Source of the DNA: Macrostomum lignano
Lineage: Eukaryota
DNA: 64,000 bases
Assembly (NCBI GenBank): GCA_002269645.1
Contig: NIVC01000137.1
Coordinates: forward strand, 625,177-689,176
Reading direction: 5' to 3'
Position numbers and translations under genes: made by a program. The number at the start of each line of letters is the position of its first letter. Positions within the stretch are counted from its first letter, which is position 1. Shown piece after piece: positions 13,281-16,526 of the stretch. The notes beneath the pieces were generated by a model that was not told where the DNA came from, did no database searches, and saw nothing but the letters and a program-made list of their open reading frames with translations.

Positions 13281-16200
13281 ATGCTGGTTGTATTGACTTC
13301 TCTGCTCCTATTATTGAGTAGCACTTTATCCTCATCTCAGGTAAGCGTTTTGGTAGTTACAATAATTAAATTTTGATACCAATAACTCCAATACTTAACT
13401 CATCAAAAATCGCATCCGAAATCCGCCACCTACACTGCAGCAGTCAACGAAAGTCGGCGCCATCATTCGGATAAGACTGTCCAACTACTCGAATCCACAT
13501 CAGGTGCTGTCTGAGACAGGAATGCCGTGCGACCAGAACAGAGGCCTGTGCGATCCCGTTTTCCACGTTAAATTGGGAACACAAGGTTATTCGTGAGTAC
13601 TGAGCATCTACCATAATATATCTACTAATGTCTATCTACCATTATCTATCTATCTATCTATCTATCTATCTATCTATCTATCTATCTATCTATCTATCTA
13701 TCTATCTATCTATCTATCTATCTATCTATCTATCTATCTATCTATCTATCTATCTATCTATCTATCTATCTATCTATCTATCTATCTATCTATCTATCTA
13801 TCTATCTATGTATCTATCTATCTATCTATCTATCTATCTATCTATCTATCTATCTATCTATCTATCTATCTATCTATCTATCTATCTATGTATCTATCTA
13901 TCTATCTATCTATCTATCTATCTATCTATCTATCTATCTATCTATCTATCTATCTATCTATCTATCTATCTATCTATCTATCTATCTATCTATCTATCTA
14001 TCTATCTATCTATCTATCTATCTATCTATCTATCTATCTATCTATCTATCTATCTATCTATCTATCTATCTATCTATCTATCTATCTATCTATCTATCTA
14101 TCTATCTATCTATCTATCTATCTATCTATCTATCTATCTATCTATCTATCTATCTATCTATCTATCTATCTATCTATTTCAGATTTGAGCAGTCAAGAAA
14201 CTCGAATGTCTTCGACAACGTGGTCAGTTTAAATGGGGAGTTTTTCACTGCAGAGTTCCGTCTGCTTCAAGAGTTGCCTGTAAGTGTGTTGAGTTAGTTT
14301 CGACGTCTTTTTAGTCATATCGTGAGCATGTTTATTTCCTATGCGCGCGCTCCAAGCACACTTTGAATGTTTCCTAACACAGGACTTGCTCCTGATTCGT
14401 GTTAAAATTGAGGACAATGACGCGTTCGATCCAGTGCCCCAGACCATCGGCGAACTAACTGAGGAGTTCCATCGGCTGCTGCCCTCCGTCCCGACTCGAT
14501 GGAACAACTCGGTAACGAAGGAGTTGTTTTTCACTCCAATCAACAAATACGTCAGGTGGGCAGCTGCATAAGTGAAAAAGTCAATTATTAAGACTGAATT
14601 CGTGGCCCCGTAGTGTACTTGGACTGCTAAAATACTAGAGCAGCAACAAGGGCATTGTAGGTAATCATACGCTCGTAGACCCACGTCACAATTTACAGTT
14701 TAACGCTGACCATCAATGTCCAGTGTCTTCCAGGTCTATACGGTAGGCGCTGCAGCACCCAGTGCACTGGAGAGCCGGTTTATCCAAGCTGCCAGAGGGG
14801 CGACACGCGGTGCGAAAACTCGCTAGGTGAGACAATTATTGCGCTGTGCAATTCAGTGATAAGCATTTTCGACAGAAAGTTTGTGTCAGAATGAAGAGCA
14901 ATTAACTGCAGCTACACTTGCACTGAAAACCTGAAATTTAATACCGATAAGATCAAATTTCTGCGCCTACCAGCCTTTAACTTCGGCATTTCTAAAAACT
15001 CCATAAAAATTAAAGCCATCAAGTAATTTAGTAGAATAATAATAATAAATAATAATAATCTATTACACCTGCCCTAATGGGCAGATGTGCAACCGACAGC
15101 TCAGCCGCAGCTATTGCGCGGCGCATCTGAAGGCTGCGTACGGCTGTTCAGTCCAAGGAATGGGGGGTCGCCACACACACCCTCAATTACCCCAGCTAAT
15201 GCTGGCACCCATTTTACAGCTGGGTGAACTGAAGCAATGCAGAGTTAAGCGTCTTGCTCAAAGACACAAATTGTTCCGAGTGGATCGAGATTCGAACCCC
15301 GATCTTTCAGTCGTAAGTCCGACGCTCTGACCACTAGGCTTCAACCCCCTAATTTTAAATGCACTAACCAAACATGGAAACCCCGAGCTTATAAAAATAG
15401 CTACACCTGAAATCGAATGTCCTCCACAATTCAGAAATTACCGGCTGCACAAATGAGAACGGCGGAGCTGTACTGGCCGGGTTTCAAGTTGAAAGCGGTC
15501 AGTCGGTGAGTGAATCGTGCAATCTGATAGAGAAATGAGAAGTAGCGCTATTCGTAAGTAAATTCACGTCTAAAACAGAGGGGGTCGCTTCATGAGACCA
15601 AAATTCCACCACACAACGCCCAAAACAGAATTCCCTTTTGAATTTTTTACCACAGATCAACATATTTTTACCAGAATTAAAATCAAGTGACATCGTCCAT
15701 ATTTTTATTTCAAGTATCGATCAATTGACATTCAACAAAACATCGTTATTTGCTTTACTAATTTCAGATTTTGATCATAACAGCGGCTGGTGTTGCTGTC
15801 ATAGTCATTGGACTGCTTGGGCTTGTCATTGTGCGTTGTCAAAGGCGTCAACAAATCATCATCAGCCGGAGAGATCCGTCCAGTATGCTGCAAGATTACG
15901 GGTGAGAATGTTTAGATATTTGTCGATCATTGAATTGTTTGATATTGATTGATTACACCTGCCCTAATGGGCAGATTTGCAACCGACAGCTCAGCCGCAG
16001 CTATTGCGCGGCGCATCTGAAGGCTGCGTACGGCTGTTCAGTCCAAGGAATGGGGGGTCGCCACACACACCCTCAATTACCCCAGCTAATGCTGGCACCC
16101 ATTTTACAGCTGGGTGAACTGAAGCAATGCAGAGTTAAGCGTCTTGCTCAAGGACACAAATTGTTCCGAGTGGGTCGAGAATCGAATCCCGACCTTTTAG

Positions 16201-16526
16201 TTACGAGCTCGTACCAGGCTATCCGCCAGGCTATATCCCTCGTTGTGCTGAATTACAGAGGTCAGCAGCAGCAGCAGCAGCAGCAACAGTTGCTGTCAAA
16301 CTCAGCGTCCGCTCAGCAAGCGCAACTTCTGCCGCAAACAGCGCGGCAAACAGCTGGTTACAGGAATCCGGTGTACCATCAGCAGCAGCAGCAGCAGCAG
16401 CAGGCTGGCCATACGGAAGAAGAAGTTTATGAAGAAGTCGAAGAACCGAAAGACGGCAAGGAGGCGCCTCCACTGCCGCCGAAAGATGCGGCTTCATTGG
16501 CGACAGCGTCGAGTGCTAAACGATGA
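13281..16526 (+). CDS. Delta/Serrate-like type I membrane protein (signal peptide, C2/MNNL-like, DSL-like, TM, polyQ tail with NPxY and PxxP), 360 aa; join(13281-13340,13441-13592,14183-14279,14383-14555,14699-14826,15435-15505,15768-15901,16259-16526)
   Basis: All 7 introns GT-AG with matching phases (0,2,0,2,1,0,2); total 1083 nt = 361 codons. Signal [20 protein letters not shown]; [24 protein letters not shown]; [11 protein letters not shown]; C-x8-C-x3-C-x8-C-x6-C-x8-C ([14 protein letters not shown]...); [24 protein letters not shown] followed by RCQRR. Confidence 0.8.
13636..14177. repeat. (TATC)n / GATA microsatellite in intron 2 of the Delta-like gene
   Basis: About 540 bp of near-perfect TATC with two TATG interruptions, ending at TTTCAG acceptor 14177-14182. 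Confidence 0.97.
15040..15349 (-). mobile_element. tRNA-derived CORE-type SINE (copy 1)
   Basis: Minus strand has a tRNA-like head with A box (TAGTGGTCAGAG) and B box (GGTTCGAATC), a MIR/CORE-like block GTGTCTTTGAGCAAGACGCTTAAC..CTTCAGTT..CTGTAAAATGGG, and an (ATT)n tail; near-identical to copies at 15950 and 23178. Confidence 0.85.
15950..16239 (-). mobile_element. tRNA-derived CORE-type SINE (copy 2)
   Basis: Body nearly identical to copy 1; lies in intron 7 of the Delta-like gene. Confidence 0.85.

What the first reader, a model, noticed from the sequence alone, without database searches (positions are those of the whole stretch)
13281..16526. Hidden EGF-less Notch-ligand-like membrane protein
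Eight phase-consistent exons give signal peptide, C2/MNNL-like region, a six-Cys DSL-like module (spacing 8-3-8-6-8 vs roughly 8-3-11-7-8 in Delta), a short stalk and a TM. Canonical Delta/Serrate ligands have EGF repeats between DSL and TM; here there are none, and the DSL loop that carries Notch-contact residues is shortened. Inference: a divergent ligand, a cis-inhibitor/decoy, or a receptor reusing the C2-DSL head. The ORF track shows only fragments of it.
Basis: partly seen in the sequence, partly recalled or inferred. Interest (0 to 1): 0.74.

Follow-up and report, generated by a model that had tools for sequence, protein, structure and literature searches.

The report
EGF-less Delta-like membrane protein, flatworm
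The window (Macrostomum lignano, a free-living flatworm) holds a real eight-exon gene for a small membrane protein whose outer part is a diverged copy of the Notch-binding "head" (C2 + DSL) of Delta/Jagged ligands, with no EGF repeats and an LDL-receptor-type uptake signal in its tail; it is an unusual natural "mini-ligand" whose partner is still unknown.

Summary
Eight GT-AG, phase-consistent exons (13281-16526, +) give a 360-aa type I membrane protein. The six-Cys module has spacing 8-3-8-6-8. Only 18 residues separate it from the TM, and there is no EGF.

The window is Macrostomum lignano. Databases hold only fragmentary or chimeric models of this gene. A 32%-identical paralogue (PAA93509.1) has the same architecture and the same seven intron positions and phases, and it passes Pfam's DSL threshold.

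A family profile aligns with the C2-DSL head of Jagged/DLL/Delta/Serrate at 96-97% hhalign probability (E 1e-9 to 1e-10). Controls score far lower. The signal comes from the DSL plus the last C2 strand, and from the first ~40 residues of the C2. The middle of the C2 has no independent sequence support. An AF2 model shows a C2 sandwich that hits Notch ligands first, but canonical ligands were in its alignment.

The Jagged-1 Notch-contact face is gone (0/5 residues, 3-residue deletion). The tail carries YRNPVY (FxNPxY-like), YEEV and PPLPPK, all conserved in the paralogue.

Reading: a lineage-specific, EGF-less derivative of a DSL ligand, either an atypical Notch-pathway modulator or a re-purposed endocytic receptor. 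It is a new variant of a known kind. Function is untested.

The parts
13261..13280 (+). Short 5' leader after an AG acceptor (cag|ct at 13258-13260). This is a possible trans-splice or cis-splice acceptor 20 nt upstream of the ATG.
   Evidence: Read directly. UniRef model P0002 splices an upstream exon (about 10394-10690) onto exactly this point (...AESAV|AIEYNSK|MLVV). Whether this is real read-through or operon processing, or a model artefact, was not tested.
13281..13340 (+). Exon 1: ATG plus signal peptide (aa 1-20).
   Evidence: The same exon content and phase are found in paralogue exon 1.
13441..13592 (+). Exon 2 (152 nt): first C2 strand, Cys50/Cys57 loop, second strand (aa 21-71). This is the most conserved part of the ectodomain, with a conserved N35 sequon. 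The acceptor is a tandem cag|cag (NAGNAG).
   Evidence: paralogue exon 2 is also 152 nt; 54% identity to the paralogue; aligns with the N-terminus of canonical MNNL, score 27-29 against controls of 9-21.
14183..14279 (+). Exon 3 (97 nt): middle C2 strands (aa 72-103).
   Evidence: paralogue exon 3 is also 97 nt; strands in the AF2 model.
14383..14555 (+). Exon 4: C2 strands including [13 protein letters not shown] (aligned with FSLIIEAWH of the ligands) and ...FTPINKYV (aa 104-161).
   Evidence: seen as a bare ORF 14341-14571.
14699..14826 (+). Exon 5: last C2 strand (SLTLTINVQ) plus DSL Cys1-Cys5 (C170, 179, 183, 192, 199).
15435..15505 (+). Exon 6: DSL Cys6 (C208) plus an 18-aa Cys-free stalk.
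   Evidence: in the paralogue the intron also lies 4 residues before Cys6, phase 1. pLDDT is below 40 in the model.
15768..15901 (+). Exon 7: transmembrane helix (aa 227-248) plus the basic juxtamembrane stretch RCQRRQQ.
16259..16526 (+). Exon 8: Gln-rich cytoplasmic tail with Y306-RNPVY311 (FxNPxY-like), EEEVY329EEVEE, PPLPPK, and the stop codon.
   Evidence: motifs shared with the paralogue: FRNPVY, DAYDELEE, PRPLPP; YKNPVY in the other genomic copy.
16784..16795 (+). Two adjacent AATAAA hexamers about 260 nt after the stop: a candidate poly(A) signal.
   Evidence: Read directly. Not tested.

Best explanation
**Shown.** This is an intact eight-exon Macrostomum lignano gene encoding a 360-aa type I membrane protein. 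Its parts, in order:
- signal peptide
- a ~145-aa beta-rich domain whose two ends align with the C2/MNNL domain of Delta/Serrate/Jagged
- a six-Cys DSL module with a shortened third loop
- an 18-aa stalk
- a TM helix
- a 112-aa tail

It is one of two old paralogues (32% identity) that share architecture, all intron positions and the tail motifs. Neither has any EGF repeat.

**Inferred origin.** The family derives from a DSL-type Notch ligand that lost the EGF/DOS stalk and the canonical DSL contact face.

**Inferred mechanism (the reading I commit to, about 0.45).** The protein still acts in the Notch pathway as an atypical membrane-tethered ligand or modulator.
1. The C2-DSL head sits close to the membrane.
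2. It engages Notch, or a Notch-like EGF-repeat receptor, mainly through the C2 side. That is the part best conserved between the paralogues.
3. The FxNPxY-like signal in the tail couples the bound protein to clathrin/PTB-adaptor endocytosis rather than to Mib/Neuralized ubiquitination.
4. Depending on affinity this yields weak trans-activation or, more probably, cis-inhibition or titration, as with DLL3.
5. The conserved acidic YEEV and PPLPPK motifs suggest additional reverse signalling through SH2/SH3 proteins.

The confidence figure of 0.45 refers to this mechanism. For the identity of the gene (a real gene encoding an EGF-less homologue of the C2-DSL head) I would give about 0.85.
For: **Gene model**
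- GT-AG introns and consistent phases.
- 7/7 intron positions and phases shared with the annotated paralogue PAA93509.1. Exons 2 and 3 have identical lengths. dN/dS is 0.29 between the two paralogue copies.
- partial UniRef models use junctions 1-5.

**Paralogy**
- E 8.5e-13 over residues 7-244 of the query (ectodomain plus TM) in a search of 1.84e9 proteins.

**DSL**
- Pfam PF01414 in the paralogue, 25.8 bits against GA 24.2.
- a profile search of PDB sequences puts Drosophila Delta 7alk first (E 0.04), then Jagged-2 (5mw5/5mw7, E 0.14); Jagged-1 (2vj2, E 0.35) ranks fifth, after one unrelated weak hit. The matches span the last C2 strand plus the DSL.
- hhalign probability 96.2-96.9%, E 2.6e-9 and 1.6e-10, 167-170 colinear columns.
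- reversed and permuted controls score 9-21.
- canonical DSL (score 44) fits better than a MEGF-type EGF (28) or ligand EGF1 (16).

**C2**
- the N-terminal 40 aa align at the right register, E 8e-5 to 7e-4.
- Cys50/Cys57 fall on ligand-invariant Cys55/Cys71.
- UniRef's automatic name is 'C2 domain-containing'.
- the AF2 model has 8 strands, with 10-residue block-mean pLDDT 64-89 across the C2.
- Foldseek top hits are Jagged-1 4cbz (E 5.7e-9), DLL4, JAG2, Delta, Serrate and DLL1, followed by generic C2 domains.

**Tail**
- the motifs are conserved across paralogues.
- PMC3063240: Delta's intracellular domain can be replaced by the LDL-receptor internalisation signal.
- PMC11843878: LAG-2's EGF motifs are dispensable.
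- PMC5538765: site 1 (C2-EGF12) is better conserved among ligands than site 2 (DSL-EGF11).
- in this family the C2 N-terminal segment (54%) and the C2-DSL junction (58%) are the conserved parts.
Against: - No binding or expression data exist.
- The protein alone fails Pfam DSL and MNNL and gives only 56% hhalign probability.
- All five residues of the Jagged-1 DSL face are lost: F199, R201, R203 and D205 are replaced and F207 is deleted. GWxG is also lost.
- The DSL is only 26% identical between the paralogues, which is little more than the Cys scaffold. The DSL surface is therefore not under shared constraint.
- There is no DOS/EGF1-2 region.
- The tail has no PDZ ligand and no recognisable Mib/Neur motif. 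It looks more like that of an endocytic or signalling receptor.
- The C2 middle has no independent sequence signal.
- The confident AF2 model used canonical ligands in its alignment. The unbiased single-sequence model was useless (pLDDT 34).
- Whether M. lignano has Notch was not checked here. Other flatworms do (PMC6225667).
Confidence: 0.45

Rival explanations
1. Re-purposed head. The C2-DSL ectodomain no longer binds Notch. It recognises another partner (a lipid or glycan on an apposed membrane, or another surface protein). The protein then works as an endocytic or tyrosine-phosphorylation-coupled surface receptor through its NPxY, YEEV and PPLPPK motifs.
For: - 0/5 Notch-contact residues remain, with a 3-aa loop deletion and GWxG lost.
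- The DSL is poorly conserved between the paralogues, while the C2 strand-loop-strand, where C2 domains carry their lipid-binding loops, is the best conserved.
- An acidic EDND loop aligns with the Jagged-1 D140/D144 lipid-binding loop region. D144 falls on D116 in both the hhalign and the MAFFT alignment; D140 falls on an Asp only in the MAFFT alignment.
- The tail motifs are receptor-like and conserved, and there is a weak Pfam hint to the transmembrane adaptor SCIMP (E 0.1).
- DLL3 shows that a DSL-family head can lose both Notch and liposome binding (PMC5538765).
Against: - Every characterised C2-DSL protein acts in the Notch pathway.
- C. elegans DSL ligands also lack the RPRDD-FGH loop (from my own knowledge) and still signal.
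- No alternative partner is suggested by any data.
Confidence: 0.38
2. Decaying or non-functional duplicate, or a gene-prediction artefact: a truncated copy of a Delta-like gene that is not expressed as modelled.
For: - No full-length product of this locus is in the 5.8e9-protein collection.
- Existing models are fragments or chimeras, one of them with frame changes (P0001).
- No transcript evidence could be consulted.
- Repeats sit in introns 2, 5 and 7.
Against: - The ORF is intact over eight exons with canonical splice sites.
- All seven intron positions and phases are shared with an annotated paralogue at only 32% identity.
- The protein has its own TM and tail, with motifs conserved across paralogues and copies.
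- There are only 5 conservative changes in 165 aa against the other genomic copy.
- The paralogue's dN/dS is 0.29.
Confidence: 0.07
3. Not DSL-related. The Cys module is a MEGF/scavenger-receptor-type EGF-like domain, and the N-terminal domain is an unrelated beta sandwich.
For: - The full HMMER search hit an oyster MEGF10 repeat (E 7e-6) over the module.
- The first three spacings (8-3-8) equal those of that repeat.
- hhalign against that repeat gives 81% probability over 25 columns.
Against: - Canonical DSL fits better and over the whole module (score 44 against 28).
- The match extends into the preceding strand and to the N-terminus in the correct order.
- The paralogue hits Pfam DSL and no EGF family.
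- MEGF repeats have eight Cys; this module has six.
Confidence: 0.05

Closest known systems
Canonical DSL ligands (Delta/DLL1/DLL4, Serrate/Jagged1/2). Solved heads: 4cbz, 5mvx, 5mw5, 4xbm, 7alk, 7alt.
   Same: - Type I membrane protein with an N-terminal C2/MNNL followed directly by a six-Cys DSL.
- The first strand (IIRIRL against FELxL) and the CDPxFxV against CxTFFRV motif.
- Two invariant C2 cysteines.
- The strand before DSL Cys1, and the YG-x2-C-x3-C core.

   Different: - No EGF repeats or DOS motif (canonical ligands have 6-16).
- DSL loop 3 is three residues shorter and lacks FCRPRDDxFGH.
- GWxG is lost.
- The C2 lacks the Cys78/Cys92 pair and about 16 residues.
- The tail has FxNPxY-like, YEEV and PPLP motifs instead of Lys/Ub-ligase motifs and a PDZ ligand.
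- Not detected by Pfam MNNL or DSL.
M. lignano paralogue PAA93509.1 / PAA78946.1 (BOX15_Mlig022023g1, Mlig016699g1; UniProt 'DSL domain-containing protein').
   Same: Same architecture, eight exons with the same phases, the same tail motifs, and no EGF.
   Different: - Only 32% identical.
- Keeps F184 and R186 of the DSL face and the YYG motif, so it passes Pfam DSL.
- Spacing is 8-3-8-7-6.
- No poly-Gln.
Vertebrate DLL3.
   Same: A divergent DSL-family member whose head has lost the conserved contact residues. It does not bind Notch or liposomes in vitro and does not activate in trans (PMC5538765; PMC2064846 abstract).
   Different: DLL3 keeps six EGF repeats and is detectable as a Delta orthologue.
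C. elegans DSL ligands (LAG-2, APX-1, DSL-1...).
   Same: - Highly diverged N-terminus and DSL, with few EGFs.
- LAG-2's EGF motifs are dispensable for function (PMC11843878).
- They rely on separate DOS proteins (PMC2504490, listed).
   Different: They retain at least one EGF and the GWxG end of the DSL (from my own knowledge; not tested here).
Bivalve EGF-less DSL and DSL-tandem genes.
   Same: DSL-family genes without EGF domains, reported in lophotrochozoans (PMC8166818).
   Different: They are reported as DSL or tandem DSL only, and only in bivalves. A C2-DSL-TM-NPxY arrangement is not described there. Platyhelminths were left out of that ligand tree.
Engineered Delta with the LDL-receptor internalisation signal.
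   Same: A ligand head coupled to an FxNPxY-type endocytic signal instead of the ubiquitinated tail (PMC3063240). Here YRNPVY and FRNPVY resemble the LDLR motif FDNPVY (motif recalled from my own knowledge).
   Different: That is an artificial chimera with a full Delta ectodomain. Here the arrangement is natural and the head is minimal.

Membership tests
DSL (Delta/Serrate/LAG-2) Notch ligands | DSL domain: six Cys, about 45 aa, Pfam PF01414. | tested here: met
   Six Cys all align with Jagged-1 C187/196/200/212/220/229. The family profile against canonical DSL gives probability 96%, E 2.9e-9. The paralogue is above Pfam GA. Caveat: this protein alone has no Pfam hit and only 56% probability.
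DSL (Delta/Serrate/LAG-2) Notch ligands | N-terminal C2/MNNL domain (PF07657) immediately before the DSL. | tested here: inconclusive
   There is no Pfam MNNL or C2 hit. The N-terminal 40 aa and the last strand align with canonical MNNL, but the middle has no signal (score 9.6). The AF2 model is an 8-strand sandwich that hits ligand C2 and generic C2 domains, but its MSA contained canonical ligands.
DSL (Delta/Serrate/LAG-2) Notch ligands | EGF-like repeats (including the DOS motif in EGF1-2) between the DSL and the membrane. | tested here: not met
   There are 18 Cys-free residues between Cys208 and the TM. No EGF family appears in Pfam. The same holds for the paralogue.
DSL (Delta/Serrate/LAG-2) Notch ligands | Conserved Notch-binding face of the DSL (Jagged-1 F199, R201, R203, D205, F207; residue list from my own knowledge of Cordle et al. 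2008, a paper that is not held). | tested here: not met
   The aligned residues are Q182, T184, E186, V188 and a deletion, so 0/5. The paralogue has 2/5.
DSL (Delta/Serrate/LAG-2) Notch ligands | Single-pass type I membrane topology. | tested here: met
   N-terminal hydrophobic leader, and one TM at 227-248 followed by basic residues.
DSL (Delta/Serrate/LAG-2) Notch ligands | Binds and activates (or cis-inhibits) a Notch receptor. | not testable with these tools
   This needs binding and reporter assays.
C2 domain superfamily | Eight-stranded antiparallel beta sandwich. | tested here: inconclusive
   Eight strands in model residues 7-150. After the ligand hits, Foldseek finds PLC-delta1, cPLA2, perforin, otoferlin and E-Syt C2 domains at E 1e-6 to 1e-4. 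The model depends on a mixed MSA. Five of those eight strands (at model residues 7-17, 66-78, 85-94, 126-132, 141-150) recur at overlapping positions in the unbiased but low-confidence single-sequence model. UniRef's automatic name is 'C2 domain-containing'.
FxNPxY (LDLR-type) endocytic / PTB-binding motif | The sequence [FY]-x-N-P-x-Y in a cytoplasmic tail. | tested here: met
   Y306-R-N-P-V-Y311 here, YKNPVY in the other copy, FRNPVY in the paralogue. Only the motif is shown; its function was not tested.
MEGF / scavenger-receptor-type EGF-like repeat | Eight-Cys laminin-type EGF in tandem arrays. | tested here: not met
   Only six Cys and a single copy. The fit to DSL is better than to a MEGF10 repeat.

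The most novel reading that the evidence does not exclude
A naturally occurring minimal Notch ligand. A bare C2-DSL head on an 18-residue stalk would bind Notch and activate or gate it using an LDL-receptor-type FxNPxY endocytic signal instead of Mib/Neuralized-dependent ubiquitination. It would be the natural counterpart of the engineered Delta-LDLR chimera. It would show that neither EGF repeats, nor the DOS motif, nor the canonical DSL face are needed for ligand function.
Probability: 0.12. Interest if true: 0.78.

Novelty: new variant of a known kind. Interest (0 to 1): 0.5.

Why it matters
Notch ligands are defined by C2/MNNL + DSL + EGF repeats. Genome surveys discard anything with another architecture (PMC8166818), so EGF-less relatives go unseen.

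This family poses a clean natural question: what can the C2-DSL head do on its own, held a few nanometres from the membrane and tied to a ubiquitin-independent endocytic signal?

- If it still touches Notch, it bears on the minimal requirements for ligand binding, pulling force and cis-inhibition.
- If it does not, it is the first clear case of the Notch-ligand head being re-used for another function.

M. lignano is a transgenic, RNAi-amenable regeneration and stem-cell model, so the question can be tested.

The practical result is a corrected full-length gene model for a locus that public databases carry only as fragments and chimeras.

Tried and rejected
- **Pfam on the protein itself:** nothing significant, no DSL, MNNL, C2 or EGF.
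- **phmmer against PDB sequences:** only low-complexity tail noise.
- **AF2 on the single sequence:** pLDDT 34, unusable.
- **Homologues outside M. lignano:**
  - Word-indexed search with the protein and with the family profile found none.
  - A full HMMER scan of 1.84e9 representatives found none. It returned only a junk repeat translation (P0004) and an oyster MEGF10 repeat.
- **Last homology search, merged family + canonical profile:** returned only short fragments of canonical ligands. These were useful as alignment rows but say nothing about EGF-less architectures elsewhere.
- **Full-length MAFFT alignment A5:** it misaligned the DSL of the query, so I replaced it with trimmed domains (A6).
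- **C2 region without the DSL:** only the first ~40 residues score above controls. The C-terminal half does not, so I do not claim sequence-level proof for the whole C2.
- **Second copy of the gene in the window:** none.
- **tRNA and Rfam searches for the intronic 270-bp repeat:** nothing.
- **Cordle et al. 2008:** could not be read. The five face residues are from my own memory, checked only against the numbering of 4cbz.
- **Transcript evidence:** none could be consulted. No spliced product of this locus is in the collection.
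Full report
**1. The observation**

The region 13281-16526 (+) reads as eight exons. Every intron begins GT and ends AG behind a pyrimidine-rich tract, and the phases chain into one 1083-nt ORF of 360 codons. The protein, in order:
- A hydrophobic leader, [20 protein letters not shown].
- About 150 residues with two Cys (C50, C57).
- A six-Cys block, C170-C208, with spacing 8-3-8-6-8. Jagged-1 has 8-3-11-7-8.
- 18 Cys-free residues.
- One strong hydrophobic helix (227-248, followed by RCQRR).
- A 112-residue Gln-rich tail.

The six-frame ORF list shows only parts of exons 4 and 8, so the gene really is hidden from an ORF track. 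No second copy lies in the window.

**2. Source and database status**

The only close database matches are three UniRef entries of Macrostomum lignano at 97-100% identity. All are partial or chimeric:
- P0003 stops after exon 4.
- P0002 reads an upstream exon through the 5' leader and runs into intron 4.
- P0001, from another genomic copy, joins an upstream exon to exon 2, changes frame inside exon 5 and skips exons 6-7.

These models independently use junctions 1-2 to 4-5. No full-length product of this locus is on record.

**3. A paralogue validates the model**

An exhaustive HMMER scan of 1.84e9 representative proteins found one true relative. P0005 (PAA93509.1, BOX15_Mlig022023g1) matches at E 8.5e-13 and 32% identity over residues 7-244 of the query, and it has a near-identical second copy, P0007.
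- **Layout.** It matches ours: leader, beta-rich domain with the same two Cys, six-Cys module, short stalk, TM, and a tail with the same motifs.
- **Exon structure.** I reconstructed it on two contigs of assembly GCA_002269645.1. It has eight exons and the same phase at all seven introns. Exons 2 and 3 are the same length as ours (152 and 97 nt). The intron inside the Cys module lies four residues before Cys6 in both genes.
- **Selection.** The two paralogue copies differ by 14 synonymous and 12 non-synonymous changes, giving dN/dS of about 0.29.
- **The other copy of our gene.** It differs from ours by five conservative substitutions in 165 residues.

Together these results argue strongly against a chance ORF or a decaying fragment. 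No transcript data could be consulted.

**4. Is it C2-DSL?**

*Direct tests on this protein are negative or weak.*
- It has no Pfam DSL, MNNL, C2 or EGF hit.
- Alone against a 26-sequence profile of canonical heads it gives only 56% hhalign probability.

*The paralogue and the family profile are much clearer.*
- The paralogue exceeds Pfam's DSL gathering score: 25.8 against 24.2 bits, E 1.3e-5.
- A four-sequence family profile searched against all PDB sequences puts Drosophila Delta first, then Jagged-2; Jagged-1 ranks fifth and rat DLL4 is a much weaker hit (E 6.3). E-values for Delta and the Jagged proteins are marginal (0.04-0.35), but each match covers the last C2 strand plus the DSL.
- Profile against profile, the family aligns colinearly with the C2-DSL heads of Jagged-1/2, Serrate, DLL1, DLL4 and Delta. 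The head sequences were harvested from PDB matches. The result was probability 96.2%, E 2.6e-9, 170 columns.
- With a larger canonical profile it was 96.9%, E 1.6e-10.
- Reversed or column-permuted templates score 9-21, against 63-70 for the real one.

*Splitting the signal shows where it comes from.*
- The DSL alone gives 96% (E 2.9e-9).
- The C2 alone aligns only over its first ~40 residues: the first strand, the Cys loop and CDPxFxV against CxTFFRV. The register is right, with score 27-29 and E 8e-5 to 7e-4.
- The rest of the C2 has no independent signal (score 9.6).

*MAFFT, with no guidance, agrees.* It places all six DSL Cys and both C2 Cys on ligand-invariant cysteines.

*The rival EGF reading is weaker.* The module fits canonical DSL (score 44) better than an oyster MEGF10 repeat (28, first 25 columns only) or the ligands' own EGF1 (16).

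**5. Structure**

The single-sequence AF2 model was useless (pLDDT 34).

The second and last job used an alignment of the family plus 17 trimmed canonical heads (A6).
- Mean pLDDT was 69.6 and pTM 0.67.
- The C2 region has eight strands, with 10-residue block-mean pLDDT of 64-89.
- The first DSL hairpin is moderately confident. The second half of the DSL and the stalk are poor.

Foldseek against the PDB gives Jagged-1 (4cbz, E 5.7e-9, TMq 0.57) first. DLL4, Jagged-2, Delta, Serrate and DLL1 follow, and then generic C2 domains such as PLC-delta1, cPLA2, perforin, otoferlin and E-Syt.

Canonical ligands were in the alignment, so this result shows compatibility with the fold rather than independent proof of it.

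**6. What differs from a ligand**

| Feature | Canonical ligand | This protein | Paralogue |
|---|---|---|---|
| EGF repeats / DOS motif | present | none | none |
| DSL third loop | FCRPRDDxFGH | 3 residues shorter | 3 residues shorter |
| Jagged-1 face F199/R201/R203/D205/F207 | 5/5 | Q182/T184/E186/V188/deleted (0/5) | 2/5 |
| GWxG before Cys6 | present | lost | lost |
| C2 second Cys pair (Jagged-1 C78/C92) and ~16 residues | present | absent | absent |

Between the two paralogues, identity varies by segment:
- C2 first strand-loop-strand: 54%
- C2-DSL junction: 58%
- DSL: 26%, essentially the scaffold only
- Stalk: 11%

**7. The tail**

Three short motifs survive at 20-30% overall tail identity:
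- [FY]-[RK]-N-P-V-Y, here Y306-Y311. This is FxNPxY-like; the LDL receptor's own motif is FDNPVY (from my own knowledge).
- An acidic tyrosine, [10 protein letters not shown], against DDAYDELEE in the paralogue.
- PPLPPK, against PRPLPP in the paralogue.

There is no C-terminal PDZ-type ending. Pfam's only hint for the tail is a sub-threshold match to the transmembrane adaptor SCIMP.

From established knowledge, NPxY motifs recruit PTB-domain adaptors (Dab2, ARH, Numb) for clathrin uptake, pYEEx motifs bind SH2 domains, and PPLPxK/R is a class II SH3 ligand. These functions are inferred, not shown.

**8. Mechanism**

*Shown:* an intact gene, a conserved two-member family, and homology of the head to the C2-DSL module.

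*Inferred:* descent from a DSL ligand by loss of the EGF stalk.

For function I weigh two readings almost equally.

- **(a) An atypical Notch-pathway ligand or modulator, about 0.45.**
  - Every characterised C2-DSL head acts on Notch.
  - LAG-2's EGFs are dispensable (PMC11843878).
  - Site 1 (C2-EGF12) is better conserved than site 2 among ligands (PMC5538765). Here too the C2 is the conserved part.
  - Delta's tail can be replaced by the LDLR internalisation signal (PMC3063240).
- **(b) A re-purposed endocytic or signalling receptor that no longer sees Notch, about 0.38.**
  - The contact face is lost.
  - The DSL surface is not shared between the paralogues.
  - The tail is receptor-like.
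  - DLL3 shows that such heads can lose both Notch and lipid binding.

An artefact or pseudogene (about 0.07) and a non-DSL EGF protein (about 0.05) are unlikely.

**9. Comparison and novelty**

This is not a canonical DSL ligand. Two defining features were tested and not met: EGF repeats and the DSL contact face.

EGF-less DSL genes have been reported in bivalves, as DSL or tandem-DSL genes (PMC8166818). DLL3 and the nematode ligands show how far the head can drift.

A C2-DSL-TM protein with no EGF at all and an FxNPxY-like tail is not described in what I could search. The family was found only in M. lignano. Few macrostomid proteomes are in the databases, so that range is a lower bound.

I rate it a new variant of a known kind, with interest 0.5. 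The natural experiment it offers is attractive and it sits in a tractable model animal, but its function is untested and the C2 and Notch links rest on remote homology.

Noticed in passing
window 13631-14177: A (TCTA)n microsatellite of about 137 units (98% pure) fills most of intron 2 of the gene. It creates long spurious ORFs in three frames.
   Followed up: partly
window 15059-15330, 15952-16201 (+) and 23198-23470 (-): A ~270-bp interspersed repeat (90-97% identical copies). Two copies sit in the same orientation in introns 5 and 7 of the gene. It looks SINE-like but has no tRNA or Rfam match.
   Followed up: partly
window 10394-10699 (+): An upstream coding exon (Gly/Ser- and Gln-rich). 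Public models P0001 and P0002 fuse it to this gene, either at the exon 2 acceptor or at an AG 20 nt before the ATG. This could be a chimeric annotation, read-through or operon-type processing. One UniRef cluster name ('PDZ domain-containing') may come from that upstream gene.
   Followed up: no
window 17360-18103, 20958-21779, 34006-34773, 42819-43589 (+); possibly also 26402-27148 (not compared; no Pfam hit): A tandem family of intronless ORFs of about 250 aa just downstream. The two whose translations I read (17360-18103 and 20958-21779) begin with signal-peptide-like leaders and share a near-identical C-terminal ~70 residues. Three of the ORFs just pass Pfam Lectin_C (23-24 bits).
   Followed up: partly
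window 18707-19734: A 21-bp minisatellite of 49 copies. It gives overlapping ORFs of 360-440 aa on both strands that are not genes.
   Followed up: partly
window 62521-63582 (-): An uninterrupted 353-aa ORF with Mos1-type HTH and DDE transposase domains, that is, a mariner/Tc1-like element.
   Followed up: partly
window 927-1947 and many other sites (24345-24948, 35645-36194, 41763-42556, 55037-56184 ...): The window is dense in minisatellites with periods of 10-61 bp. The purine-rich array at 927-1947 explains the GC skew of 0.55 in the first 2 kb.
   Followed up: partly
L001 17640-21127 and L002 10281-11995: Both copies of the paralogue are followed on the opposite strand by a glutathione-peroxidase (GSHPx) gene. 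The two loci are therefore syntenic duplicates, consistent with a recent genome duplication in M. lignano.
   Followed up: no
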